Below, in pieces: positions 1 to 31,125 of a stretch of 32,258 nt of DNA. Source of the stretch: Octopus bimaculoides (lineage: Eukaryota); contig NC_069000.1 in assembly GCF_001194135.2 (NCBI RefSeq), positions 14,484,903 to 14,517,160 of the forward strand, in the 5' to 3' direction. The number at the start of each line of letters is the position of its first letter. Within the stretch, counting starts at the first letter, position 1. A program made the position numbers and the translations under genes. The notes below the pieces were generated by a model, which ran no database searches, was not told the origin of the DNA, and saw only the letters and a list, made by a program, of their open reading frames with translations.

Positions 1-225
1 TTGTGAGACGCTGCGTTCAATCATGTAAAAACAAATAGTAAATGAGTATATGCATATATACGTACAGGTATATATATATATGAAGTAGTTTTCGTAAACT
101 TATCCTCCGACGCTACTCTATCTCTTTCTCTTTCCTTTCTCCCCCCCTCGTTCTTCCTCTGTACTACTACGTATCTCGCCTTACCCCTCTTGTTCCTCCT
201 CTGTTACTACTACGTATCTCCTTTT

Positions 226-993
226 CCCCGGATGCTCACACCTTTTCAGAAGCAGGAACAAGTTGGTTGCTCCCAGGCTCTTTTTGCAATGTGCCAAGAA
301 AACGAGGACTTTTTCAGCAGACTAATCATACAGGATGAAACACGGGTCCATCACTATGATCCTGAGACTAAAGTCCAGTCGAAGCAATGGAAGCATGATA
401 ACTCACCACCTCCAAAGAAGACTCATACCCAACCCTCGGCAAGCAAGATGATGTTTTTACAGTCTTTTGGGACTAGAGAGGAGTTGTGATGATAGATTTT
501 CTGGCAAAGGGCACCACAATTAACAGGACATATTGTACTTCTCTGCTGCAGAAATTGCGGGATGCCATCAAAGCAGAGAGGCGTGGAATGCTGACCAAAG
601 GGGTTCAGTTTCTCAAGACAGCGTTCCATCCAGTTCACAATGAGCATGTTGGTCAGATGAAAGCACACTTCTGCAGCTATGAAATCCTTCCTCATCCTCC
701 TTACTTTCCCGACCTCACACCATATGACTTCCACCTCTTTCCAATCAAGATGTCTTTTTTGAAGGGGAAGCACTTTTCAGATGATGATGAACCTATTTCC
801 GAGGTAAAATCTTAGCTCCCGACGCAACCTACCATCTTCTACAGACGAGGCCTTCACAGCTGCATCAAGCGATGGGGGAAGTGTGTCACCATTGGTGCTG
901 GCTATGGAGAGAAGGACTAATAATTATGCCAAGTTTCGTTTATCCCAGTCCTTGGGAAGTGGGTCAAGGGAAATCTTTAATGAATGCCACTCG
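226..993 (+). pseudogene. 5'-truncated, frameshifted mariner (DD34D-type) transposase remnant with right TIR
   Basis: Across frames it reads PRML...QDETRVHHYDPETKVQSKQW...QDSVP...HPPYFPDLTPYDFHLF...FYRRGLHSCIKRWGKCVTIGAGYGEKD* (stop 918-920), matching the mariner DETW, QDNA and YSPDLAPSD motifs. It ends in a TIR-like ...TAATGAATGCCACTCG followed by TA (994-995). Confidence 0.92.
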
Positions 994-1269: not shown

Positions 1270-1341
<72 letters not shown>

Positions 1342-1345
<4 letters not shown>

Positions 1346-1514
1346 TGCATCAGTACAAGGGTAGAACTCACTTTTCAGCTGATTAAAGTGGGGCAGTGTA
1401 GTGTCATGAAGTGCTTTGCTCAAGGACACAACGCGTCGCCGTGTTCAGGTCTTCGAACCCACGACGTCATGACAGTGAGTCGAACATTCTAACCACTAGG
1501 CCATGTGCCTTCAC
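1342..1514 (-). mobile_element. tRNA-derived SINE (family D), 5' part, interrupted by (GA)n
   Basis: Minus strand has A-box-like TGGCCTAGTGG and B-box-like GGTTCGAAGACC, followed by GTGTCCTTGAGCAAAGCACTT, which resembles CORE/V-type SINE bodies. Confidence 0.7.
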
Positions 1515-3022: not shown

Positions 3023-3070
<48 letters not shown>

Positions 3071-3170
3071 CTGTGGGAATACACACATTTATCTCACGAA
3101 CACAAACACACATATATATATAAGAAAGAGAGATGACAAAGGAATAAACGATTATCTTATGCACTTCATT

Positions 3171-3986: not shown

Positions 3987-4374
3987 GGCCAATGTTTGGT
4001 TCCTTTGTTCTAGTCACACACAGCCTTACAACTACTTTTCTCGTTTATAAAAAACGTGAAGAGTAGCAGGCACTGCTTTTACTTACACACAATACATTCG
4101 CTGTTGGCGCGTAGCGTATTTAAGTTAAAGCCTAACAAAGGTATGTATAGATAAATTGTAAATCGGAATTTACAAACGTGCGTTGCGTTCAATAAACTCA
4201 CATTTAGCCTCGCTATATATATATATATATCTCAAGCAGGGGTATAACGAAAGTTTTCCATTAAAATTTATAATTAAATTGATAAGTAAGGTTAATATTT
4301 GGTTATGATTTTACCTTTTTCGATGAGTGTGCAGTGTACACCTCGCACACCTGGAATATACGTCCTTGACATAC

Positions 4375-4597
4375 ATAGGAAAGTTGGTTATACATCATTA
4401 GATGTATACCTGACTTTCCTATATAAAATTACGAATATAACGGAACGCTGAACTCCAGACCATCAACTTATACAACATTTATTCAGGTGGTAAATATATA
4501 CATTTTTAGCTCTTGTTGACAGTTGTTACAGCTTCTGTGTGTGTGAGCATAGTTGTTGGGACGTTGTTATGTAGATGTAAGCGAGTTGTCTAGCGTA
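4375..4597 (-). repeat. Left arm of long inverted repeat (LTR-like or TIR-like)
   Basis: Reverse complement of 5759-5974, differing by 4 substitutions and one 7-bp indel (ACAGTTG). Confidence 0.92.
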
Positions 4598-5758
4598 AGT
4601 CCGAAAGATGGAGAGTGACAGCTATACACGTAAAGAGACTGTCTCCAGAGTTGGAATGTTGGAGACACTGCTTGACACGTCCATGCTCATGGCCGGCCGA
4701 CCGAGAAAGAAATAGAATTAAGNNNNNNNNNNNNNNNNNNNNNNNNNNNNNNNNNNNNNNNNNNNNNNNNNNNNNNNNNNNNNNNNNNNNNNNNNNNNNN
4801 NNNNNNNNNNNNNNNNNNNNNNNNNNNNNNNNNNNNNNNNNNNNNNNNNNNNNNNNNNNNNNNNNNNNNNNNNNNNNNNNNNNNNNNNNNNNNNNNNNNN
4901 NNNNNNNNNNNNNNNNNNNNNNNNNNNNNNNNNNNNNNNNNNNNNNNNNNNNNNNNNNNNNNNNNNNNNNNNNNNNNNNNNNNNNNNNNNNNNNNNNNNN
5001 NNNNNNNNNNNNNNNNNNNNNNNNNNNNNNNNNNNNNNNNNNNNNNNNNNNNNNNNNNNNNNNNNNNNNNNNNNNNNNNNNNNNNNNNNNNNNNNNNNNN
5101 NNNNNNNNNNNNNNNNNNNNNNNNNNNNNNNNNNNNNNNNNNNNNNNNNNNNNNNNNNNNNNNNNNNNNNNNNNNNNNNNNNNNNNNNNNNNNNNNNNNN
5201 NNNNNNNNNNNNNNNNNNNNNNNNNNNNNNNNNNNNNNNNNNNNNNNNNNAGTGTCTGTAGAGAAAAAATCCAGTTCGTACAAGAGTCCCACAAGGAGAT
5301 AGAATGTCCTGTTGAAACTTGGCGACGTCGGGGGGAATGCTTGTAGTTAGTTGGTAGTAGTAATTGTTGTCGTCACGGTGGTAATCTTGGTTGAACGAAG
5401 CTGGTGGCGAAAAGGTCACTCGGTGATGGTGTTTGAAGAGGCGCGCTTTTACAGACAATCGACAGACAAATCTCTGTACGACCATTAGCGAAAACCTCGA
5501 AGAAAAATTTTCTTAACCCAAGATGAAAAAACGACCGTGCGAACTCAAAAAGGAGAAATGGTGACGAATGGAAAAACAGAGGACTCCTTTTATTTAAACG
5601 TGTCACACGGTCGAACACAAAAATAATTTATCAATGATGATATACAAATATGTCATCCTACGATAACATAGATTTCGTAAATACCAGTAATGAGACGATA
5701 AAAGATGACAACCGTATGAAATGAATAACAAGAGATATTTAGTGTGGCATAAAAGATG

Positions 5759-5974
5759 TACGCTCGACAGCTCGCTTACATCTACATAACAACGTCCCAA
5801 CAACTATGCTCACACACACAGAAGCTGTAACAACAAGAGCTAAAGATGTATATATTTACTACCTGAATAAATGTTGTATAAGTTGATGGTCTGGAGTTCA
5901 GCGTTCCGTTATATTCGTAATTTTATATAGGAAAGTCAGGTATACATCTAATGATGTATAACCAACTTTCCTAT
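5759..5974 (+). repeat. Right arm of long inverted repeat; LTR-like features
   Basis: 216-bp copy with TATA-like TATATATTT (5849-5857), AATAAA (5866-5871) and a terminal ~50-nt hairpin (5926-5975). It is followed almost directly by a tRNA-Trp-complementary sequence. Confidence 0.92.
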
Positions 5975-5976
5975 AC

Positions 5977-6020
5977 TGGTGACCCCGACGTGATTCGAAC
6001 ACGCAGCCCGCTGAGCTGCA
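5977..6020 (-). other. 3' portion of mature tRNA-Trp(CCA) including CCA tail; on the + strand a primer-binding-site-like sequence
   Basis: TGGTGACCCCGACGTGATTCGAACACGCAGCC is the reverse complement of GGCTGCGTGTTCGAATCACGTCGGGGTCA-CCA, the metazoan tRNA-Trp 3' end as I recall it (32 nt). Partial similarity continues to 6020. It is not a full tRNA gene. Confidence 0.85.
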
Positions 6021-6635
6021 ATAACCCACTTTCTTATAANNNNNNNNNNNNNNNNNNNNNNNNNNNNNNNNNNNNNNNNNNNNNNNNNNNNNNNNNNNNN
6101 NNNNNNNNNNNNNNNNNNNNNNNNNNNNNNNNNNNNNNNNNNNNNNNNNNNNNNNNNNNNNNNNNNNNNNNNNNNNNNNNNNNNNNNNNNNNNNNNNNNN
6201 NNNNNNNNNNNNNNNNNNNNNNNNNNNNNNNNNNNNNNNNNNNNNNNNNNNNNNNNNNNNNNNNNNNNNNNNNNNNNNNNNNNNNNNNNNNNNNNNNNNN
6301 NNNNNNNNNNNNNNNNNNNNNNNNNNNNNNNNNNNNNNNNNNNNNNNNNNNNNNNNNNNNNNNNNNNNNNNNNNNNNNNNNNNNNNNNNNNNNNNNNNNN
6401 NNNNNNNNNNNNNNNNNNNNNNNNNNNNNNNNNNNNNNNNNNNNNNNNNNNNNNNNNNNNNNNNNNNNNNNNNNNNNNNNNNNNNNNNNNNNNNNNNNNN
6501 NNNNNNNNNNNNNNNNNNNNNNNNNNNNNNNNNNNNNNNNNNNNNNNNNNNNNNNNNNNNNNNNNNNNNNNNNNNNNNNNNNNNNNNNNNNNNNNNNNNN
6601 NNNNNNNNNNNATATATATATATATATATATATAA

Positions 6636-6765
6636 GCCGCTACGCTATGAGTTCAAATTCAGCCGAGGTCGACTTTGCTTTCCTTTCATCTCTTTCGAGG
6701 TCGATAAATTAAGTACCAGTTGAGTACTGAAGTCGATGTAATCGACTTCCCCCTTGTGCCTATAG
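6636..6765 (+). mobile_element. SINE family A, partial
   Basis: GAGTTCAAATTC-GCCGAGGTCGACTTTGC...TTTCATC...GGTCGATAAATTAAGTACCAG body shared with the full copies at 14606 and 22289. Confidence 0.8.
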
Positions 6766-7124: not shown

Positions 7125-7145
7125 TTATGTATGTATGTATGTATG

Positions 7146-7191
<46 letters not shown>

Positions 7192-7192
7192 C

Positions 7193-7228
<36 letters not shown>

Positions 7229-7480
7229 TATTCTATATACCTTATCAATCATTCTATACACCTTATGTATGTATCTATCTATTTATCTATATACCTTATC
7301 TATCTATCTATATACCTTATCTATCTATCTATCTATCTATATATCTATCTATCTATCTATCTATTATTCTATATTCCTTATCAGTCATTCTATATACCTT
7401 ATCTATCTATCTATCTATTATTCTATATTCCTTATCAGTCATTCTATATACCTTATCTATCTATCTATCTACATACATAC
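7125..7480. repeat. (ATGT)n/(ATCT)n microsatellite with an embedded 54-bp higher-order unit
   Basis: Unit TATTATTCTATATTCCTTATCAGTCATTCTATATACCTTATCT... starts at 7362 and 7416, with a diverged copy at 7226. Confidence 0.9.
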
Positions 7481-8234: not shown

Positions 8235-10719
8235 GTAAATCAAATCAAATTATACTGAAAAATCCACGGTGTTCTCTCTGTGCGCCCTTTAACTTCTCAC
8301 AATCTGTTTTTGTTTCTATTACTGATACATGCAGTCTTAACTAATATTGCCCACTACTCGTTTTTCCTTTTTTTCTTCTCCCCCCTTTTCTTTTCTTAAA
8401 TAAAAAAAACACTAACATTTCCAGCTTCCCCTTTTAAGCATTCGTTATAATTTCCCGAAAATTACGTATATTATAAAGAATTAGCAAATATCAGATTTTT
8501 TTTTTTTTAAAGAATTTACTTCAACCTCTCAATACAGTTCTTCTGTAGTAACCTGCTGCATCTGGAAACATAGCTATGCATTACGTTTTGCTATCACACC
8601 GTCACATCGAGCAACAATTTAAATATTGTAATAAGTCACTAGAATTGTTTTAATCAAATCGATATGGATGGACAGAATCACTGTAGTGTGGCAAGTAATT
8701 AAATGATTTTTATTCCAGTTTAAACTATTACATATACAGCTATGATATTTTAATTAACTGTTATAAATTATACTAATTTTCCCTCTTTTATTCTATTGTT
8801 GCTATTTTTAAAAAATTAACTTTTTATTATATTTTATTTTCGATCTTGAAGTATTGTTAAAATGCTTTTACTACAAAAATTTGATGGAATGATTATTATA
8901 TTTTCTACGCTTTCATATATATATATATATATATATATACATATGCATATGTATACACACACACACACACACACACACACATTATTCCATGTGCTTGTAA
9001 CGGATAGAACTGAATACGAAGCAAAGGTCAATTATATCGTCACATATATATTATTACATAAAATAGCTAACTAAAGTATCTGTTATTTTGTTTTGATTGG
9101 TGTGAGCGCATAAACTACTGGATTACACGATTACATGAGGGTTTCTGCATATTATGTATCCTCTTTACGAAAGTGGAGTTAGAGAGGCACATCATATATT
9201 TCAATGTAGCTCAACATTTTATGCGATATTTTTGACATTTATTCTTCTCATCTTTCGAAAAGTTTACTTCCTTGCCTCCCTTCTTAACAAACTAATTCAT
9301 CATTGTCGTTGCTGTCGATGTTTTAGTCCCAGGTTAGATCCGATCGAGCAAGGGCGTTCCAACCATGACTATCTCATCTTTTATTCAGGCACTACACATT
9401 TAGGACTATGTTACATAACTTCATGCGTACTTCCATTAAAAAAAAGAAAATCCCAGCAGAGTTCAATTTAAAGGGAAACATGGCTGCTATTTCTAGCGTG
9501 TCGAGCGACCATTTAAAGGCGCTATCGTTTTACTCGTGGTGGGAATGCGTGTGTAGAATAAGTATGACATAATTCGCCTCCAGAGTTGAAATCTATTCGT
9601 TTTGTTCGACCCATCAGTGACTGTTCTCATTGCCTATTGTTGCTGAATTGGGCTGCCTCAGAACAGTGTAATCTCTCTCTCTCTCTCTCTTTATATAACT
9701 CATTAGTTTACAAAACAACAATCGAAATACTGCACACTTAAAAGGTAATATAAGTAAACCAATAACTGACCGAATTCTTTTGTTACATTTATAATTTGAT
9801 GATAACAGATTACTCTTGCGAAAAACAGCAACAACCGAAAAAAAAAAAATACAAGAAAAACAAAAACGAAAATATGTAATAAAAGAGGAATCATCGCAAC
9901 ATCAAAATACCAAAGATTTTATGCTACGAATTTCTTAAATTGTTTTCAGTTTTATTTCCCCAAGTTCGTTGCCATTTTTATAAGAATTAATATGTGTTGT
10001 GTTGAGTCAAAGGAAGTAGCTACGTCATATGTTTATTTCATTTGTTATTAATCTGTTGGACAACCTTAAAAGTACTATTAACCCCGACTATATATCGTTA
10101 CCGCTTCGCGAAGACATCAATAGAAAGGCATATTAATCAACTACTGAAAATAAAAAATAAATAAATAAAAACCCATATGGTATGTTATAATTCAAACGGC
10201 TCGGTGTTGCTGCTTTAGTTAAAGCTTCTGTCAAACCCTGAGTTGTATATAAACATATTAAAATAATAAAAGTTGACTAAGTATAAGCGCCCGAATACGA
10301 ATGTTTTTTTATGGTGTACAGTTTTTTTTACTAGTGGCTACAGAAGGATCAATGACATCAGTTTGTACTTTACCTTGCATAAACAACAATCTTAGCATAA
10401 ACATCACCGTCCCCGCCCCACCACGATCTGGAACGGCGGCAGCCGCAGCGGCAATAAGACAGTATGAGGCTTCTAATTGATAAGGGACTATGAGTGCTCG
10501 ATACGAAAAATATTTATATTATTAATATTATATTACGTTAGCAGAACGAGAGAAAGGCTACGGAATATTATTATCTTGCGGTATTTAGTGCTTCCTTCTT
10601 TTTACGTTCTGCTTTCAAATTCTGCCGAAGACGATAAAATAACAACCAGTCAACTTACTGGTTCGAGTAGAGTACACACAAATCTGTGGCTTTCTTCTAC
10701 CCACGGTAGAGAAGAATGT

Positions 10720-11440
10720 TTTCTGTTTTTTAAACTCAAGGTCAGATAATTTGAGGGAATCAGGTACTTTATTTTATCGACCCTGGAAGGATGAAAAGCA
10801 ATGTTGACCACAGCGGGTGTTTTAACTCAGAATGTAAAGAGCCGGAACAGCTAGCGCAAGGCATTTTCCCGACTCTCAACCATTTAGCCAATTATTGGTT
10901 TCAAATTTTGGCACAAGGCCGGCAAGTTCGCGGGTAGGTGCAAATCGATTACATCGACCCCAGTGTTCAACTGGTTGTTATTTTATCGACCTCGAAAGAA
11001 TGAACGGCAAAGTCGACCTTGGCGGAATTTGAACTCAGAACATAAAGACGGACGAAATACAGCTAAGCATTTTGCCGGGTGTGCTAACGTTTCTGCCAGC
11101 TCACCGCCCTCCAATGCATAAAAATATTAAAAATAGAAATTATAATTCTTTCTGCTATAGGCACAGGGCTTGAAATCTGTGGGGGAAAACTAGGCTAGTC
11201 GATTACATCGATCCCAGGGCTCAACTAGTACTTTATCGACCCTGAAAGGATGAAATGCAAAGTCGACCTTGTTAGCATTTGAACTCAGAACGTAAAGAGA
11301 AATACCACTAAGCATTTTGTCCAACACACTTATGATTCTGCCAGCTTACCACCTATACAATAAAAAAATTTTCTACTACAGGCTCAAGGCCTCAACTTTT
11401 GTGAGAGGGCTTTAGTTGATTACATCAACCCCAGTACAGA
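10720..11440 (-). mobile_element. Head-to-tail cluster of four SINE family A copies (two near full-length)
   Basis: Repeated reverse complement of the family A body at ~10720-10890, 10890-11110, 11140-11355 and a tail fragment at 11365-11437. Confidence 0.85.
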
Positions 11441-11780: not shown

Positions 11781-11809
11781 TTTTTTATTCAATTCCTAAT
11801 AATCATCAC

Positions 11810-12232
11810 CATCATCATCATTTAACGTCTGCTTTCCATGCTAGCATGGGTTGGACGATTAGACTTAGGACTGGCGAGCCAGATGGCTACGCCAGGCTCC
11901 AATCTGATTTGGTAGAGTTTCTACAGCTGGATGCCTTTCCTAATGCCAACCACTCCGAGAGAGTAGTGGGTGCTTTTACGTGCCACTGGCACGATGGCCA
12001 GTCAGGCAGTACTGGCAACGGCCATGCTCAAAATGGTGTATTTTATGTGCCACCTGCATGGATTCCACAACTGGATGCCCTTCTTAACACCAACCACTCC
12101 AAGGGTGTAATGGGTGCTTTTTATGTACCACTGGCACAGGTGCTTTTATGTGCCACTAGCATAGGTACCTTTACATACCACCTGCACAAGTGCCAGTTAT
12201 GTGACACTGGCATCGGCTACGACTGATTTCAC
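11810..12232 (-). mobile_element. SINE family C (GGAAGGGCATCCAGCTGTAGAAAC domain, (GAT)n-ending RTE-like tail) with internal duplications
   Basis: Shares body and the CCAACCCATGCTAGCATGGAAAGCRGACGTTAAA(YGAT)n tail with copies at 12735-12892, 13135-13356, 24315-24545, 28655-28775 and 30000-30120. Resemblance to Ceph-SINEs is an inference. Confidence 0.8.
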
Positions 12233-12734: not shown

Positions 12735-13356
12735 GTAAAAGAACCCACTACACACTCGGAGTGGTTAGCGTTAGGAAGGGCATCCAGCTGCAGAAACTCT
12801 GCCAGATGATCAGATTGGAGCTCACCAGTCCCCAGTCAAACCGTCCAACCCATGCCAGCTTGGAAAGCGGACGTTAAATGATAATGATGATATATATATA
12901 TATATATATATATANNNNNNNNNNNNNNNNNNNNNNNNNNNNNNNNNNNNNNNNNNNNNNNNNNNNNNNNNNNNNNNNNNNNNNNNNNNNNNNNNNNNNN
13001 NNNNNNNNNNNNNNNNNNNNNNNNNNNNNNNNNNNNNNNNNNNNNNNNNNNNNNNNNNNNNNNNNNNNNNNNNNNNNNNNNNNNNNNNNNNNNNNNNNNN
13101 NNNNNNNNNNNNNNNNNNNNNNNNNNNNNNNNNNTAAAAGACACCATTTCGAGCGTGGCCGTTTTCGTGCGGGTGACACGTAAAAGCACCCACTACACTC
13201 TCTGAGTGGTTGGCATTAGGAAGGGCATCCAGCTGTAGAAACTCTGCCAAATTAGATTGGAGCCTGGTGTTGCCATCCGGTTTCACCAGTCCTCAGTCAA
13301 ATCGTCCAACCCATGCTAGCATGGAAAGCGGACGTTAAACGATGATGATGATGATA
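12735..13356 (+). mobile_element. Two SINE family C copies flanking a gap (12735-12892; 13135-13356)
   Basis: Both contain TAGGAAGGGCATCCAGCTG and end in GGAAAGCGGACGTTAAA(YGAT)n. Confidence 0.85.
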
Positions 13357-14390
13357 TGTATATATATATATATATAAAATACAAAAATGGGACAAGAACG
13401 CAAAACATCCAGACAGGTGATACAAAAAAGGGATAACAAACATCCAGACAGACGATACAAAGAAAACAAAGACTGGTCATTCAAAGTTTTCTTTCCTCAG
13501 TCGAGTTCCAGATTATCTTTGCAATTTCAGCTGGTTATATCTATATATATGATGGGCTTCCATATTATTGCTGTCCTACATATTACACTTACAAGCTATT
13601 GGATGGCTCTTGGCTATAGTAGAAGACACTTGCACAAGGTACCACATAATGTGACTGAAGTGGAAACAACATGCTTGTGAAGCAAACTTCTTAACCGCCT
13701 GGCTAACCCTATATGGATGTTATGAAACGTTCCTGTCTTATTGTTTGATCAAACAGGTGTCATGTTTTGCTTGCTTCACTTATCTCTTACTGTCCTGATT
13801 ACTCCCATTACCAATATCTTGACTAATAGTTAATGATCAATAAAAAGAATTAGCTCATAGCTTGAATGTAGCAATACTAATCTCTCCAATAATATAATAT
13901 TTATTGGAGAGATCTGAATTCAGAATCTTGTAACATCAGATAAGATATGTAGGACTTAACTGTTGTCATCAATAGTTTACTTTTAGGTAGGTTATTAATT
14001 AACTCACTTCAACTCTGGCCATCAGTTAACATCACTTTATCTATTATAAATTATCTTCCTTACATCACAGCTGTTTCTCTTCCAGTGAGTGTTTTGTCTA
14101 ATGCTTAGTTACATTGTTCAGGCACCCAAGAAGAGGCTGAGAATTTCTTACACTGAAACCATGGTTTCAGGTTCAGTTCCTCTGCATGGTACCTCGGACA
14201 AATGTTTTCTAATTTTGCCTGTAGCTGACCAAAGCCTTGTGAGTGGATTTGGTGGATGGAAGCTAAAAGAAGCCCATCATGTTCTTTAACTTGTTTGAGT
14301 CATTGGACTGTGGTCATGCTGAAGCACTGCATTGAAACATCTAGTTGAACAAATCCACCCCAGTACTTGCGTTTTTTTCAAAGCCTGGTA

Positions 14391-15095
14391 CCGTATATAT
14401 TCGTGGATAGGTCGCACTTTTTTGTACCAAAAATTTCAATGGAAGTCATGGGCGTGACTTATCCACTCAGCATCACAGTGATGTAAAGTAAACAGCAGTG
14501 TATCGGTAATCCAGGTTCAAGTGTACCCTGGGCCTGGGCTTTTCAGTTTTCAAGTTGTTATGGAAACATTTTTGTGACATCTATTTGATAGAAACTGGAA
14601 ACCAGGGGCAATGAGCTGGCAGAACCGTTAGCACGCTGGGCGAAATGCTTAGCGGTATTTTGTCTGTCGTTACGTTCTGAGTTCAAATTCCACCGAGGTC
14701 GACTTTGCCTTTCATCCTTTCGGGGTCGATAAATTAAGTACCAGTTATGCACTGGGGTCAATATAATCGACTTAATCCCTTTGTCTGTCCTTATTTGTCC
14801 CCTCTGTGTTTAGCCCCTTGTAGGCAATAAAGAAATATGAAACTGGAAACCAGAAGTCTGCATATTGGTCTTTTTGACAACATCGATTCACTCCAATTTT
14901 TAATTTAATAATTTTAATAATTGCAAACCCTAATCATGAGTAAGAGAAAAAGTTATGAAGCAAGTTTTAAGTTGAAAGTGGTGGATTATGCAGATGAACA
15001 TGGAATATTTGATATTTAACACATATTAGTTATATTTACATTAAAAAAGAGCCATGTGACTCCCCAGATTATAGTGTGACCTATCTACTGGACAG
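14391..15095 (+). mobile_element. Tc2/pogo-like non-autonomous derivative carrying a transposase N-terminus, with a nested SINE
   Basis: Left end TA|CCGTATATATTCG...GGTCGCAC is typical of Tc2-like TIRs. 14936-15004 encodes MSKRKSYEASFKLKVVDYADEHG, like the Brinker-type DNA-binding N-terminus of pogo/Tc2 transposases. The right end is decayed and approximate. Confidence 0.65.
14606..14838 (+). mobile_element. Full-length SINE family A with 15-bp TSD
   Basis: TSD GAAACTGGAAACCAG at 14591-14605 and 14839-14853; tail ...GGCAATAAAGAAATA. Confidence 0.92.
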
Positions 15096-17080: not shown

Positions 17081-17925
17081 GGCGCAGGTGTGACTATGGT
17101 TGAGAAGCTTGCTCTCCAACCATATGGTTTTGGGTTCAGTCCCACTACATGACACCTTGGGAAAGTGTCTTCTACTGTAACCTCAGGCTAGCCAAAGCCT
17201 TTCATCCATTAGTGGTGGACAATAATCCTCCCCCTGCACCCAAAAAATCCAATGTAAGATAGTAGATTTGCAGAACTGTAATAATGTCAGACAAGATACC
17301 TTTGCAGCATTTGTTCCAGCTCTTAGTGTTCTGAGTCAAATTCCACCAAGATGTTCAAAAGATGCATTCCTGTCGACTTGCAGGACTAGAATGGGAATTA
17401 ATACAAAATCCTCAAACCAAAAAGGCCAGCATGCACCAAATAGATGGTGCTGGGTAGGAGTTGAGAGAGCGGGATGGTTCCTCTTTCTGGAAAGATATAT
17501 GTCCCAGTGTATGAATTAAATAAAGAAACTTACAAACTCAATATAACTGTACAACTAGCAAATACTACACAGGCACGGATGTATGGTTAAGATCTTGCTT
17601 TGTAATCAAATGGTCTTGGGTTCAATCCTAATGTGCAACACTTTGGGCAAGTGTCTTCTTCCATAACCCCAGACAGACTAAAACCTTGTGAGTGGATTTA
17701 GTAGACATAAACTGTGTGGAAACTCATCATATAATGTATGTATGTGTGTGTGCATGTACATATGTTTGTTTGTACATGTGTTTGTGTGTGTGTGTATGTA
17801 TACATGTGTTTTCAGTTTGTGTTTGTTTCCTCATTGCTCGACAACTGTTGTTCGTTTGTTTACATCTCTGTAACTTAGTGATTCGACAAGAGAGACTGAT
17901 GAAATAGATAACTCCCAGACTTCAA
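17081..17925 (+). mobile_element. Two SINE family B copies (17081-17200 head only; 17569-17925 near full-length)
   Basis: tRNA-like head (GGTTCAGTCCCACT / GGTTCAATCC B-box) followed by CCTTGGGMAAGTGTCTTCT and GTGAGTGGATTT.GTAGA. Confidence 0.8.
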
Positions 17926-20010: not shown

Positions 20011-20989
20011 ACACACACACACACACACACACACGTGTATGTGTGTATGTGTGATGACCGTCCACATAGTTTCTGTCTACCAAATCTACTCATAAGGCTT
20101 TGATTACCATGGGGCTATAGTAGAAGACAACACTTACTCATTACAATAATAATATTAAAAAAAAAGACACCCAATAAACTTGCAAATATTTACCATTTCC
20201 CTGTTGCTAACCAATCTCTATAAGAACTGAAACATCTGGCGAGTCTCTTTATAGATTTGTTTCTAAGATAGCTTCCCTACACAATGTACAACAAAAACTA
20301 AGAATTATTCATCTTTCTTTTTCTTTTTTTGGTTTCATTTTCGGTCAGTAGGGTTTCCAGATCAAGCTTCATGCTACCTTCTTTTCATCGAATATAGAAC
20401 TAAATCTATCAAGTAATTCTATTTAGGTTAAATAATTTATGTATTCAGTTCAGCACTATCAACTGATGACTAATGGGTGGTATTTCCGTGTGAATACAAA
20501 GAGATCCAATAGTTACTGATATCTCATAGCTATTGCTCGGAGAACTAAATTATTTTGGAATAAGTAATATATTATTTCAACTAAATTCTTTTGGTCCTAC
20601 TGTCTTGTGATTAGGAGATAAATCTTCCCAACAAGAAATCAAAATGTCAAATGGACTTAGCAGGAAATGAAAATGTTCTACAGTCTTCAGTTAATCTGTA
20701 TTCTCCAATCTTTTAAAAGAACACAATTATCACAGTAATATATATTGTCAAAATACTTCTTGGCAGATTTATTGGAAACAAGTACTAATGAGATCAGCGT
20801 CATCGTCATCATCATCATCATAATTCCCCAAAACACTATTATCTCTGCTGCCACTACCAAAATGACCACTGTCACCACCACCACCACCACCATCTCACCA
20901 CCATCATCGTCTCACCATTTTTAGCACACTTATATATAATCATATTGGAATAGGATGGACAGGCCTACTTAATAATTTATCCCCAATCA

Positions 20990-21310
20990 AGGCAATGAAC
21001 TGGCAGAATCGGGAGCATGCCAGGCAAAATGCTTAGCGGCATTTTATCCGTCCTTACATTCTGAGTTCAAATTCCACCAAAGTCGACTTTGCCCTTAAGG
21101 GTAGTGAGCTGGCAGAATCATTAGCACGCCGGACAAACTGTTTAGTGGCATTTTGTCAGTCTTTACATCCTGAGTTCAAATTCTGCTGGGGTTAACTTTG
21201 CCTTTCATCCTTTTGGGGTTGATAAAATAAGTACCGGATGAACACTGGGGACAATGTAATCAACTTAGCCCCTTTCCTGAGATTGTGGGCCTTGTGCTAA
21301 AATTTGAAAC
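20990..21310 (+). mobile_element. Tandem SINE family A copies (3'-truncated copy followed by a near full-length copy)
   Basis: Two GAGCTGGCAGAATC heads (~20997 and ~21106), each followed by the GAGTTCAAATTC body. Confidence 0.85.
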
Positions 21311-21620
21311 CAATGTATCTCCAATCAGCTCTTTTATGCCGTTTTCCTCTTATTTTTCTTGTAAGTTCTACCAGACCAATTATTACACCTCCAAATCTCC
21401 CCAAACATCTTTATAGCTATTCCCCATCAACACGAGCAACACATTTTGATCAACCCATATTATCTGTATGCAATGCATGTTCATATCAGTAGAACCATGT
21501 CCTTGCATATACAAATTAATAATTCTAATGTCCAGTCTCTCTTTCAGCTCACTCACACTCAAGCCTCCCCACTCTCTCCTATTGTTAGGTAACTTATGAG
21601 TCATACTCAATTCTTTCCCT
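21310..21620 (-). pseudogene. Highly decayed RTE-type LINE ORF 3' end
   Basis: Minus strand SELKERLDIR..., shifted-frame *YEHALHTD (~WYGHVLRMD) and RGKRHKRADW (~RGRPRKTW). Confidence 0.4.
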
Positions 21621-22087: not shown

Positions 22088-22288
22088 TGTTAGATGATTT
22101 GTAAGAAACAGGGTTCACTTGATATTCAAGAGCTTAGAGTTAGCCACAAAGCAGAGAAGAAAAAAAACTGTTGACTGACAATTGCCAGAAGTTTCTTAGA
22201 AAGCAAGCCACTATATCTGGCTCAAAAAAGTGAATGAATGGTGCAGCAAGAACAAGCATTGAGGATGATAGAAACATCTGGCTCAAAG

Positions 22289-22518
22289 GCGGCGAGCTGG
22301 CAGAAACATTAGCACGCCGGGCGAAATGCTTAGCGGTATTTCGTCTGCCGCTATGTTCTGAGTTCAAATTCCTCCGAGGTCGACTTTGCCTTTCATCCTT
22401 TCGGGGTCGATTAAGTAAGTACCAGTTACCCACTGGGGTCGGTGTAATCGACTTAATCCCTTTGTCTGTCCTTGTTTGTCCCCTCTATGTTTGGCCTCTT
22501 GTGGGCAATAAAGAAATA
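22289..22518 (+). mobile_element. Full-length young SINE family A with ~19-bp TSD
   Basis: AGAAACATCTGGCTCAAAG at 22270-22288 and 22519-22537; CpGs largely intact. Confidence 0.93.
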
Positions 22519-23384
22519 AGAAACATCTGGCTCAAAGTTGCAATATTTGACTCTCCAAAAAGGCCCATCACCAAACTTTGGTGCCTTGGGGTGCTGCAGA
22601 ATATTCTGGGTAGGCACTAATTTGTAATAATGCTAAAGTGGAGTTTTTAAATAAACGTATCACTGTGAATCAAAGGGTGCACTATTGAATAGTGAGGGGG
22701 CAGTGCCACCCCCTTAGTGATGGACATGTCTACAAAGCTCATATTGTTGTGTGGGAGTTTTGTCACCTACATCAGCAGGTAGGCCTGGGCAGCTCTGGTT
22801 TTGGGGTGGAAGGCACTGAAATACCTACAGAGCTGCTTCCAGTGTCTGATGGGACACTGACTTCAGAATTTGGTGATAGAGTGCAGCAGCACCCACAACA
22901 CATAGACAGTTTACTATAGACAGTCGAGGTGACATGAAATTGAGATCTGGAAATTGATATTCAATATATAACAAATGTTGACTGAAAAATGTTGGACTTG
23001 AGTGACTAAATTTACTTGTAGTTATTTCTTCCTTGTCACCACATCACTGCAACAATAACAGTTTATAATGTAGGGGTATCCAATGTTCTCCAGTTCAGTT
23101 TGCTATTAGCAAATTTTAAGCTTGATTCCATTAAGTACTTCACAAAAACCAGCCATTAGTAAAATCAATAATTGATTGTATTTCGGATGTTACTGTAGTG
23201 AGTATTATGGAATATTAGGTAAAGTCTCAGAGGGATAAGGTCATCATGGATTCATTCTCAATTCTTGGTTGAAGTCAGTTACCTTAGTTAATGCTGCTTA
23301 TTCTTGAGAAAAGGTTCAACATAACTTTTGATTCTTCGTGGGACTTTTGTGAAGATATATATATATAACATCACATTGATATGA

Positions 23385-23549: not shown

Positions 23550-24593
23550 ACACTTTCTCTCTTCTCATACGCATAGAGAGATATACTCACAGACATTAAG
23601 AGAGAAAGAGAGAGAGGGGGACAGACAGACAGACAGACAGAGCAAGAGTGTTGAAGAGAACAAGAAAAGCCTTAAATACGTCAGTGTTGAACGTGCAACA
23701 TTAAATAGGTTGTGTCAGATAGACTGAAAGCCATCTTACAGATTTTGTGGATTTTATAGTTTGAAAGTGGTATTTTTGGGTTTCAGTTATTTTCTGAATT
23801 TGATAACTGGCAGCACCATACTGATAATATTTAATATACTATATCATGTCACTAACAAAACAGTCCTTGTGTTTACTCAAAGGATGAAATTAAGATATTT
23901 TAATTGAAGAGTGGAGGCTTATATAATTTTTAAAAAACAAAAAAAGACAAAATTTGCTAACTGGCAAATTTCTGTGCTGACCCACAGCAAAAATAATTAG
24001 AAGGAACATTGTTCAAGATTAATTACTGTAAAATGAGAACCAGTTGTTGCACTGTGGTGGCTTGTGCACCTCAATGGCCCTTAGAGCTTTGTCAGTCGAG
24101 TGCAAGCTCCTGGTAGGACTTCCTATGCTGGACAGGTCAAAGGACTGAGGCCAGACTAATATGTATCACCTCTTCCCAGAGGTAAAAAAAAATTGAATTT
24201 GTATTGGGCTTAGGCAAAATTATAGAAGCAACAATGACAATTCAGAACCAACTAGACCTGGGAGAGGAACATATTAACTCGTCATCATAATCATCTTCAC
24301 CACCACCACCACCACCATCATCATCATTTAACATCTGTTTTCTGTGCAGGCATGGGTGGAAGGTTTGACTGGGACTGGTAAGGCTGGGAGCCACACCAGG
24401 TTCCATTGTCTGGTTTGGCTTTGTTTCTACAGCTGGATGCCCTTCCTAATGCCAACCACTTTACAAAGTGTACCGGGTGCTTTTTACATGGCACCAGCAC
24501 CTGCACCTGCACTAATGCTTTTTGTGTGGCCCCTAAAAAGCACTCCATCAGGGAATCATATAACACAGTGCAGGAAAATCCAAAGGGAAATTA

Positions 24594-27860: not shown

Positions 27861-28289
27861 ACATCTTAAATTCCAGGATGGAAGTCTTCAAACCCTGCTT
27901 ACATTTCAGGCAGTTCCTACTGAAATCCTGGGACCTGCAAGCTGACTGGGTGGATTCTGGATAGCGGTTGACCCTTCTCCTTTGTGTGTTCAGTAAGTAG
28001 CTACAAGGTCTTTTCTCCCTCCATTTTGAAGAGAGTTTATAGGCCACCGGCCATTAGGGTCTGACAAGATGTTGTAAAACTAAGCGTTTTATGGACACAA
28101 GATCCTGGATAACCCTATAGATTGGCCATAACTACCTTTATCTAAATATATATATATATATTATAAGATCTGGTAATTAGTCATATATTAATATATTAAT
28201 TAATATCGATCAATTATCAGGGGGCCAGCACATTTAAAGAATCAAAGAGATTCAGAAATATTATCTGCAATCTCAGGGGATTAAGGTAC

Positions 28290-28422
28290 ATTTTAAAAAA
28301 TAACGTCGACCACTAACGTGGACAATTAATGCACTAGAGAACTTTTGAGAACTTAATAGACACAAGATGTGATCTATTTCTAGCGCATTAATTGTCCACG
28401 TTAGTGGTCGACGTTATTTTTT

Positions 28423-28427
<5 letters not shown>
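28290..28427. repeat. Near-perfect palindrome: 49-bp arms (1 mismatch), 40-bp spacer; MITE-like
   Basis: ATTTTAAAAAATAACGTCGACCACTAACGTGGACAATTAATGCACTAGA (28290-28338) versus its reverse complement at 28379-28427. Confidence 0.95.
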
Positions 28428-28458
<31 letters not shown>

Positions 28459-30467: not shown

Positions 30468-30499
<32 letters not shown>

Positions 30500-30502
30500 A
30501 TT

Positions 30503-31125
30503 GTCTGGTAAGAAGGTGAGGAGCTGGCAGAAACGTTAGCACACAGGACGAAATGCTTAGTGGTATTTCGTCTGTCTTGACGTTCTGAGTTCAAATTCCG
30601 TCGAGGTCGACTTTGCCTTTCATCCTTTTGGGGTCGATAAATTAAGTACCAGTTACACATTGGGGTCGATGTAATCGACTTAATCCGTTTGTCTGTCCTT
30701 GCTTGTCCCCTCTATGTTTAGCCCCTTGTGGGCAATAAAGAAATAAGAAGTTTGCTTCCCAACCAAATGGTTCCAGTTTTCAATTCCACTGCATGGTACC
30801 TTGGGCATGAGGCTGACCAAAATTATTGTGAGTGGATTTGGTAGATGGAACCTGAAAGAAGCCTGTCATACATATAGCTATATGTGTATCAGTGTGTGTT
30901 GTGTGTGTGTGTTTTTGAGTCTGTGTTTCTCCCCCATCATTGCTTGACAACCGATGTTGGTGTGTTTGTGTCTCCAGAACTTAATGCTTCAGCAAAAGTT
31001 TCTGATAAAATAAGCACCACAATATAAGTACTGGGGTTATTTCCTTTGACTAAAAGTCTTCAAATGAGTGCCCCAGCATGGCCACGGTTTAATCAGTGAA
31101 ACAAGTAAAAGATTAAAGACAAAAG
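30503..31125 (+). mobile_element. SINE family B interrupted in its head by a full-length family A copy (30516-30743)
   Basis: TAAGAAG duplicated at 30509-30515 and 30744-30750; the family B head resumes TTTGCTTCCCAACC right after. Confidence 0.85.

What the first reader, a model, noticed from the sequence alone, without database searches (positions are those of the whole stretch)
4375..6020. Young 1.6-kb unit bounded by ~220-bp inverted repeats and abutting a tRNA-Trp primer-site-like sequence
Seen: arms 4375-4597 and 5759-5974 are ~98% identical but inverted. The right arm has LTR-like TATA and AATAAA signals and is followed 2 nt later by TGGTGACCCCGACGTGAT. The ends can also be read as TA|GG..CC|TA or AT|AGG..CCT|AT target duplications. 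The interior has no recognisable ORF. Established: LTRs are direct repeats, and a tRNA-Trp PBS is typical of CsRn1-clade Ty3/Gypsy; long TIRs with TA or AT TSD fit Tc1/mariner or ISL2EU DNA transposons, which have no PBS. No single class explains all features. Inference: a non-autonomous tRNA-primed element with inverted terminal repeats, two nested LTR copies, or a scaffolding inversion across the gap.
Basis: partly seen in the sequence, partly recalled or inferred. Interest (0 to 1): 0.75.

Follow-up and report, generated by a model that had tools for sequence, protein, structure and literature searches.

The report
Two octopus retrotransposon LTR copies, inverted
The two inverted arms are most likely two copies of the long terminal repeat of an ordinary tRNA-Trp-primed (CsRn1-type gypsy-like) retrotransposon in a gap-ridden octopus scaffold, not the ends of a new kind of mobile element, and their inverted orientation rests on an unverified scaffolding join.

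Summary
Arms 4375-4597 and 5759-5974 are inverted copies with 212 matches, 4 mismatches and one 7-nt indel. The right arm is followed 2 nt later by a perfect 18-nt complement of the tRNA-Trp 3' end.

The interpretation as one inverted-repeat-bounded unit does not hold:
- The primer-binding site lies outside the pair, so as assembled the two LTR-like copies point away from each other.
- The right arm sits on a 789-bp contig with N gaps on both sides, so its orientation cannot be checked here.
- Flipping that contig gives 5'LTR-PBS...3'LTR with matching 4-bp flanks (ATGT), but no polypurine tract.
- No gag, pol, transposase or recombinase signal lies in the unit or in the 5 kb to its right.

The host is an octopus. 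The literature reports that CsRn1-clade gypsy elements use a tRNA-Trp PBS and are abundant in cephalopods.

One oddity remains. The tRNA-Trp complement runs on for about 46 nt, well past a normal PBS.

No other copies could be fetched, because no eukaryotic DNA database was available. Verdict: ordinary LTR-retrotransposon debris, low interest.

The parts
4375..4597 (-). Left LTR copy (223 nt), LTR sense on the minus strand. It has no PBS on its downstream (left) side and no polypurine tract on its upstream (right) side.
5759..5974 (+). Right LTR copy (216 nt), LTR sense on the plus strand, 98.1% identical to the left copy apart from a 7-nt indel.
5849..5871 (+). TATATA (5849-5854) and AATAAA (5866-5871) inside the right LTR, a promoter and poly(A)-signal-like layout (U3/R).
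   Evidence: Consensus matches only; function is inferred.
5926..5975 (+). About 50-nt hairpin at the U5 end of the LTR, directly abutting the PBS. The same hairpin is at 4374-4423 in the left copy.
   Evidence: Direct family D8. RNA fold of 5915-6039: -34.3 kcal/mol, z = -4.4, 0 of 200 shuffles as stable.
5977..5994 (+). Primer-binding site, an 18/18 complement of the tRNA-Trp 3' end including CCA. It lies 2 nt after the shared LTR end.
5995..6022 (+). Continuation of the tRNA-Trp complement through the T arm, variable loop and anticodon loop. Matches are 10/11 for positions 19-29 and 11/17 for positions 30-46. Similarity is lost after that (5/17).
   Evidence: P about 5e-5 for positions 19-46 against random window segments. 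Weak Rfam tRNA match on the minus strand at 5980-6039, 14.4 bits against a gathering score of 29.
4598..4722 (.). Non-coding stretch between the left LTR and the gap. It is purine-rich on the + strand next to the LTR, which is the wrong strand for a PPT of that LTR.
4723..5250 (.). Assembly gap (528 N) separating the contigs that carry the two arms.
5251..5758 (.). Non-coding stretch upstream of the right LTR, ending in a weak purine-rich run (AAAAGATG).
6040..6611 (.). Assembly gap (572 N) that swallows whatever follows the PBS region. After it come (AT)n and a SINE, not retroelement sequence.
5756..5759 (+). ATGT immediately upstream of the right LTR. Its reverse complement ACAT lies at 4373-4376 just outside the left LTR. 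This is a candidate 4-bp target-site duplication if contig 5251-6039 is flipped.
   Evidence: It is 1 of 6 boundary combinations, about 2-3% by chance.

Best explanation
The two arms are two copies of a short (216/223 bp) long terminal repeat of a tRNA-Trp-primed LTR retrotransposon family in an octopus genome. The family is most likely a CsRn1-clade Ty3/gypsy element or a non-autonomous derivative of one.

The right copy is a 5' LTR. It has a promoter and poly(A)-signal-like layout, a U5 hairpin, then a 2-nt spacer and the PBS. Its internal region is lost in gap 6040-6611 or was never assembled. The left copy is a second LTR of the same family.

The PBS lies outside the inverted pair, so the 1.6-kb 'unit' is not a transposable unit. 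The inverted arrangement has one of two origins:
(a) The 789-bp contig that carries the right arm, bounded by gaps on both sides, was put in backwards. In that case the locus is a single small or internally collapsed LTR element on the minus strand with 4-bp ATGT flanks.
(b) It is a true head-to-head juxtaposition of two LTR fragments from nested or adjacent insertions or a rearrangement.

The tRNA complement beyond 18 nt is best read as an inherited copy of part of the primer tRNA. Reverse transcriptase would have made it by reading past the usual stop at m1A58 during plus-strand strong-stop synthesis. The first ~29 nt have stayed complementary to the tRNA and the rest has drifted.

Shown: the repeat, the PBS, the extended tRNA similarity, the absence of coding signal, the contig layout and the host clade. 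Inferred: LTR identity, clade assignment, mis-orientation and the read-through origin.
For: - A repeat end, a 2-nt spacer and a perfect 18-nt tRNA-Trp 3' complement including CCA form the canonical LTR-PBS junction.
- The second copy ends at the same nucleotide but has unrelated flanks, so the repeat end is a true element terminus.
- The arm has TATA, AATAAA and a stable U5 hairpin in the right order.
- The host is Octopus.
- CsRn1-clade elements conserve a tRNA-Trp PBS and make 4-bp TSDs.
- That clade is well represented in cephalopods, with 15 families and about 2900 copies in O. bimaculoides.
- The right arm is on a 789-bp contig between two gaps. Flipping it gives direct LTRs, an internal PBS and matching ATGT flanks.
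- The m1A58 stop, and genome-tRNA complementarity a few nt beyond 18 nt, are documented for retroviruses.
Against: - No other copy of the family could be examined, so the LTR termini and the family's usual architecture are unverified.
- The shared repeat begins TACGCT and ends CCTAT, not the usual TG...CA.
- No polypurine tract precedes the left copy in its own sense, which weakens the flipped-contig, single-element version.
- No TSD flanks either copy as assembled.
- No gag or pol signal lies in the unit or in 5 kb to the right.
- The ATGT match has about a 2-3% chance expectation and was found post hoc.
- A nearly perfect 29-nt, and recognisable 46-nt, tRNA complement is unusual for a PBS region.
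Confidence: 0.75

Rival explanations
1. A genuine, new kind of non-autonomous tRNA-primed retroelement whose terminal repeats are inverted.
For: As assembled the arms are inverted and 98% identical. The interior is non-coding. A real PBS is adjacent.
Against: The PBS lies outside the inverted pair, so reverse transcription primed there would copy the right arm and the stretch upstream of it. No known tRNA-primed replication scheme regenerates terminal repeats in inverted orientation. The orientation depends on one small contig between gaps. Only one instance is available.
Confidence: 0.04
2. A non-autonomous DNA transposon with ~220-bp terminal inverted repeats and a 2-bp TSD (Tc1/mariner-like or similar) that happens to sit next to a tRNA-derived sequence.
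For: Long, near-identical inverted arms. TA or AT can be read on both sides. A mariner-type transposase fossil lies in the window at 190-815.
Against: - TA, AT and AC all 'work' as TSDs because the flanks are ATA/ACA-rich, so the TSD carries almost no information.
- The ends (AGGAAAGT...) do not resemble Tc1/mariner termini (from established knowledge, not tested against a library).
- A perfect 18-nt tRNA 3' complement with CCA exactly 2 nt from the repeat end would have to be coincidence.
- The unit contains no transposase.
- The mariner fossil is 3.5 kb away and shares no sequence with the arms.
Confidence: 0.04
3. A SINE-like retroposon read on the minus strand: a tRNA-Trp-derived head retaining CCA, followed by a body that is the complement of a retroelement's U5-R. 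This is the architecture predicted by the 'strong-stop DNA' model for the origin of tRNA-derived SINEs. The left arm would be a copy lacking the head.
For: - tRNA-Trp similarity extends about 46 nt with CCA retained.
- A B-box-like GTTCGAATC is present.
- A T4 run follows the arm 4 nt after its end on the minus strand.
- Both copies share the same distal end.
- Octopus genomes are SINE-rich.
Against: - The headless copy starts within 2 nt of the tRNA/body junction, which is expected for an LTR end but unlikely for a random 5' truncation.
- The two copies share no tail or A-rich end.
- Similarity to tRNA-Trp is lost in the D-arm region (5/17).
- The Rfam tRNA score is far below threshold.
- The head is unrelated to the window's abundant SINEs.
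Confidence: 0.08
4. A DIRS-like (tyrosine-recombinase) retroelement, the known retroelement class that carries inverted terminal repeats.
For: Inverted terminal repeats. No convincing TSD as assembled.
Against: - No tyrosine recombinase, RT or any other coding signal.
- The visible interior has no internal region complementary to the arm tips.
- DIRS elements are not known to use a tRNA PBS (established knowledge).
- At about 1.6 kb it is far too small, unless the gap is badly underestimated.
Confidence: 0.02

Closest known systems
CsRn1-clade Ty3/gypsy LTR retrotransposons (CsRn1, PwRn1, Kabuki; the Gypsy-n_OB CsRN1 families of Octopus bimaculoides)
   Same: A tRNA-Trp primer-binding site immediately after the 5' LTR. 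Young LTR pairs (>97% identical). A 4-bp TSD if the contig is flipped. The clade is abundant in cephalopods.
   Different: No gag (CHCC) or pol is visible. The LTR is shorter (216-223 bp against 381 bp for PwRn1). No clear PPT. The ends are not TG...CA. The tRNA complement is much longer than the roughly 12-18 nt reported. The copies are inverted as assembled.
Non-autonomous LTR elements (TRIM / LARD type)
   Same: Short LTRs of about 100-250 bp, a non-coding interior and a tRNA PBS next to the 5' LTR. The total size would be about 1.1-1.2 kb if the contig is flipped and the gap estimate holds.
   Different: The terminal repeats of TRIMs are direct. The PPT is not found. The family's copy number and structure are unknown.
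Retroviral PBS regions with complementarity beyond 18 nt (lentiviral second RT stop at tRNA position 54) and the RSV U5/PBS structure (Rfam RF00467)
   Same: An identical 18-nt tRNA-Trp PBS, a hairpin next to the PBS, and complementarity that continues past m1A58.
   Different: The Rfam score is 16.5 bits against a gathering score of 47, so it is not a member. Here the complementarity continues about 28 more nt, through the T arm into the anticodon loop, rather than about 4 nt.
DIRS1-like elements and Penelope-like elements (retroelements that can carry inverted terminal repeats)
   Same: Inverted terminal repeats.
   Different: No tyrosine recombinase, RT/GIY-YIG or internal complementary region. 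No hammerhead ribozyme or any other Rfam family at gathering score. Those classes are not tRNA-primed.

Membership tests
LTR retrotransposon (Ty3/gypsy, CsRn1 clade) | PBS complementary to the 3' end of tRNA-Trp directly downstream of the 5' LTR | tested here: met
   18/18 match at 5977-5994, 2 nt after the repeat end. The clade feature is reported in PMC2582038.
LTR retrotransposon (Ty3/gypsy, CsRn1 clade) | Two LTRs in direct orientation flanking the internal region | tested here: not met
   The copies are inverted as assembled. The orientation depends on a 789-bp contig between two gaps and cannot be verified.
LTR retrotransposon (Ty3/gypsy, CsRn1 clade) | gag (CHCC) and pol (PR-RT-RH-IN) coding region | tested here: not met
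   No Pfam or homologue signal in the visible interior or in 5 kb to the right. The internal region could lie in the gaps or be unassembled.
LTR retrotransposon (Ty3/gypsy, CsRn1 clade) | Polypurine tract directly upstream of the 3' LTR | tested here: inconclusive
   A weak AAAAGATG lies upstream of the right copy. The sequence upstream of the left copy in its own sense is pyrimidine-rich.
LTR retrotransposon (Ty3/gypsy, CsRn1 clade) | 4-bp target-site duplication | tested here: inconclusive
   None as assembled. ATGT/ATGT appears if contig 5251-6039 is flipped and the LTR is ACGCT...TTTCCT. It is 1 of 6 boundary choices, about 2-3% by chance.
LTR retrotransposon (Ty3/gypsy, CsRn1 clade) | LTR termini TG...CA | tested here: not met
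   The shared repeat runs TACGCT...TTTCCTAT. Non-canonical termini are known in some gypsy lineages (established knowledge).
Tc1/mariner or other TIR DNA transposon | TIRs with a TA (or family-specific) TSD and a DDE transposase, or clear derivation from an autonomous copy | tested here: not met
   The 2-bp 'TSD' is uninformative because TA, AT and AC all fit. The unit has no transposase. The mariner fossil at 190-815 is unrelated in sequence.
DIRS-like retroelement | Tyrosine recombinase and RT genes, plus an internal complementary region matching the ITR tips | tested here: not met
   No coding signal. No interior match to the arm tips in the visible sequence. 528 nt are hidden in the gap.
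tRNA-derived SINE | Complete tRNA-like head with A and B boxes, a body, and a 3' tail shared among copies | tested here: inconclusive
   A B-box-like motif is present and the A-box region is cut by the gap. The Rfam tRNA score is 14.4 bits, below the 29-bit threshold. The two copies share no tail.
Rfam RF00467 (RSV_PBS) | Score at or above the gathering threshold of 47 bits | tested here: not met
   16.5 bits, driven by the 18-nt PBS alone.

The most novel reading that the evidence does not exclude
The family carries, as a heritable feature, a ~46-nt antisense copy of its own primer tRNA-Trp fused to the LTR end. That would be a fossil of reverse transcriptase reading through the m1A58 stop, with an extended ~29-nt PBS kept complementary to the tRNA. 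The inverted LTR pair with a non-coding core might then be a real, mobilisable non-autonomous derivative, or an intermediate of the 'strong-stop DNA' route from retroelement to tRNA-headed SINE.
Probability: 0.07. Interest if true: 0.6.

Novelty: new member of a known kind. Interest (0 to 1): 0.15.

Why it matters
If the ordinary reading is right, the finding matters only as annotation. It marks a young, probably CsRn1-type LTR family in an octopus genome, and it flags a likely mis-oriented or collapsed retrotransposon in a draft scaffold.

The one point of wider interest is the long tRNA-Trp complement next to the PBS. If it is shared by the whole family, it would be a natural example of primer-tRNA read-through becoming fixed in a retroelement. 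That bears on how PBS length is set by tRNA modification, and on the old proposal that CCA-containing tRNA-derived SINEs arose from strong-stop DNA.

Tried and rejected
1. Bridging the gap or finding the same locus elsewhere. Exact look-ups of 12 window ORFs found nothing on record.
2. Fishing other copies through spurious ORFs. A six-frame translation of both contigs used as one protein query gave no hit at E <= 10.
3. Exact DNA pattern scans of metagenome, viral and prokaryotic genome collections for arm or LTR-PBS motifs all returned 0. This was expected, because none of them holds cephalopod genomes.
4. A full phmmer search with the 78-aa frame that runs into the gap (5252-5485, minus strand). 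The 4 hits are bacterial Ig-repeat proteins that score through many summed weak repeats, so they were rejected as spurious.
6. ARAGORN and Rfam at gathering thresholds found no tRNA, ribozyme or other RNA family in the window. That argues against an intact tRNA gene and against Penelope-type hammerhead repeats.
7. The tRNA-like piece was compared with the window's SINE families and showed no relation.
8. I looked for suffix-prefix overlaps of contig ends across the gaps in both orientations and found none.
No reliable sequence was at hand, and the search has no taxon filter.

Full report
**What is in the sequence**

The window is eukaryotic: 37% G+C, dense microsatellites, and six runs of N. 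Translating one of its abundant SINE-like repeats finds only hypothetical proteins of Octopus vulgaris and O. bimaculoides. The host is therefore an octopus or a close relative.

The reported inverted repeat is real. The arms are 4375-4597 and 5759-5974, with BLAST E about 1e-100, and they are the only two copies in 32 kb. The alignment has 212 matches, 4 mismatches and one 7-nt indel, which is 98.1%. It is much the youngest repeat pair in the window; the other repeat families there are 65-91% identical.

**Anatomy of the arm**

Read on the + strand, the right arm begins TACGCT and ends TTTCCTAT. It carries TATATA at 5849 and AATAAA at 5866. Its last ~50 nt form a stable hairpin (-34.3 kcal/mol for 5915-6039, z = -4.4).

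Both copies stop at the same nucleotides at both ends, and their flanks are unrelated. These are therefore true termini of a repeated element.

Two nucleotides after the right arm comes TGGTGACCCCGACGTGAT (5977-5994). This equals the tRNA-Trp complement used as the PBS by ALV-type retroviruses and the first 18 nt of a human tRNA-Trp antisense oligo. It also aligns perfectly to the PBS segment of Rfam RSV_PBS, although the family score of 16.5 bits is far below the 47-bit threshold.

A repeat end, a short spacer and an 18-nt tRNA 3' complement including CCA make the canonical 5' LTR-PBS junction of an LTR retroelement.

**Why the 1.6-kb 'unit' is not an element**

The PBS lies to the right of the right arm, outside the inverted pair. 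The element it belongs to therefore extends rightwards into gap 6040-6611, away from the left arm.

In its own sense (minus strand), the left arm has no PBS downstream and a pyrimidine-rich sequence instead of a polypurine tract upstream. As assembled, the two LTR copies point away from each other.

Neither copy has a target-site duplication as assembled.

The visible interior (4598-4722 and 5251-5758) has no coding signal:
- Pfam finds nothing.
- No homologue appears for any of six frames.
- A full phmmer search of the frame that runs into the gap returns only spurious repeat-summed hits to bacterial Ig-domain proteins.

Six frames of the 5 kb after the right-hand gap also give no Pfam hit. 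After that gap come (AT)n and a SINE, not retroelement sequence.

**The gap question**

The two arms are on different contigs. The right arm sits on a 789-bp contig (5251-6039) with N runs on both sides. Its orientation and distance therefore depend wholly on scaffolding.

Contig ends do not overlap in either orientation. ORFs that cross the gap are artefacts of N translating to X.

If that contig is flipped, the locus reads on the minus strand as 5' LTR, PBS, 45 nt, gap, 125 nt, 3' LTR. With the LTR taken as ACGCT...TTTCCT, the flanks then match as ATGT/ATGT. That fits the 4-bp TSD of CsRn1-clade elements.

This match is only suggestive. It is one of six boundary combinations, about 2-3% by chance, and it was found post hoc. 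The expected polypurine tract is also missing. I cannot decide between a mis-oriented contig and a real head-to-head pair.

**Family assignment**

The literature reports that CsRn1-clade Ty3/gypsy elements conserve a tRNA-Trp PBS, have LTR pairs >97% identical, and make 4-bp TSDs (PMC2582038). [quoted passage not shown] In O. bimaculoides it has 15 families and roughly 2900 copies.

A tRNA-Trp-primed LTR in an octopus is thus expected. Membership is still not demonstrated:
- No gag or pol is visible.
- The termini are not TG...CA.
- The arm could not be compared with the described Gypsy-n_OB LTRs.

**The residual oddity**

I aligned 5977-6039 without gaps to the tRNA-Trp antisense oligo of PMC6379413. 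The matches by position are:

| Positions | Matches |
|---|---|
| 1-18 | 18/18 |
| 19-29 | 10/11 |
| 30-46 | 11/17 |
| 47-63 | 5/17 |

Random window segments reach the 19-46 score with P about 5e-5. The tRNA-derived stretch therefore runs through the T arm and variable loop into the anticodon loop, where the anticodon reads GCA instead of CCA. That is far beyond a normal PBS.

Rfam's tRNA model aligns 5980-6039 on the minus strand, but at only 14.4 bits against a 29-bit threshold. ARAGORN finds no tRNA. The piece is unrelated to the window's SINE heads.

The established mechanism is that plus-strand strong-stop synthesis copies 18 nt of the primer and stops at m1A58. Some retroviral genomes keep complementarity a few nucleotides further as a second stop (PMC8599865).

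My inference is that an ancestor of this copy or family incorporated a read-through copy of the primer. The first ~29 nt have remained complementary and the rest has drifted. I rate the alternative, a tRNA-headed SINE-like retroposon of the strong-stop type, as unlikely. The headless copy begins exactly at the tRNA/body junction, and the two copies share no tail.

**Limits**

No eukaryotic DNA collection was available. Exact-pattern scans of metagenome, viral and prokaryotic collections were empty, and protein-based routes to other copies failed.

**Verdict**

The interpretation as a new IR-bounded, tRNA-primed element is not supported. The most likely explanation is ordinary LTR-retrotransposon debris, CsRn1-like, in a draft octopus scaffold, with a possibly mis-oriented contig. 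The long tRNA-Trp complement is a minor but genuine curiosity.

Noticed in passing
window 190-815 (+): Two adjacent ORFs with weak Pfam Transposase_1 (mariner-type DDE) matches (E 5e-3 and 5e-4, below the curated cut-off). This is a decayed mariner-like transposase, unrelated in sequence to the arms.
   Followed up: partly
window 6636-6755, 10894-11354, 14606-14843, 20989-21314, 22267-22524, 30494-30749: At least eight copies, 73-91% identical and on both strands, of a ~230-nt SINE-like repeat with a tRNA-like head (B-box-like GAGTTCAAATTCC). One copy starts right after gap 6040-6611.
   Followed up: partly
window 11804-11994, 12735-12914, 13165-13376, 24310-24500: A second repeat family, 73-90% identical. 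Its translation (..FLQLDALPNANHSE.VVGAFTCH..) matches hypothetical proteins annotated in Octopus vulgaris and O. bimaculoides. Repeat-derived sequence has apparently been annotated as protein in those genomes.
   Followed up: partly
window 1440-1490 (-) and 17575-17640 (+): Further tRNA-like heads with A-box and B-box-like motifs (GGCCTAGTGGTTAG...GTTCGACTC; GGGTTCAATCC). They probably belong to other SINE families.
   Followed up: no
window 28287-28430: A 144-nt stretch that matches its own reverse complement at 80%, i.e. a palindromic or foldback segment.
   Followed up: no
window 1272-1341, 3025-3075, 7126-7471, 8915-8981: Long microsatellites: (GA)35, (GT)25, about 85 units of (TATC) with 21/54/136-nt higher-order periodicity, and (AT)n(AC)n. 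Several assembly gaps abut (AT)n or (TA)n runs, which suggests the gaps are caused by simple repeats.
   Followed up: no
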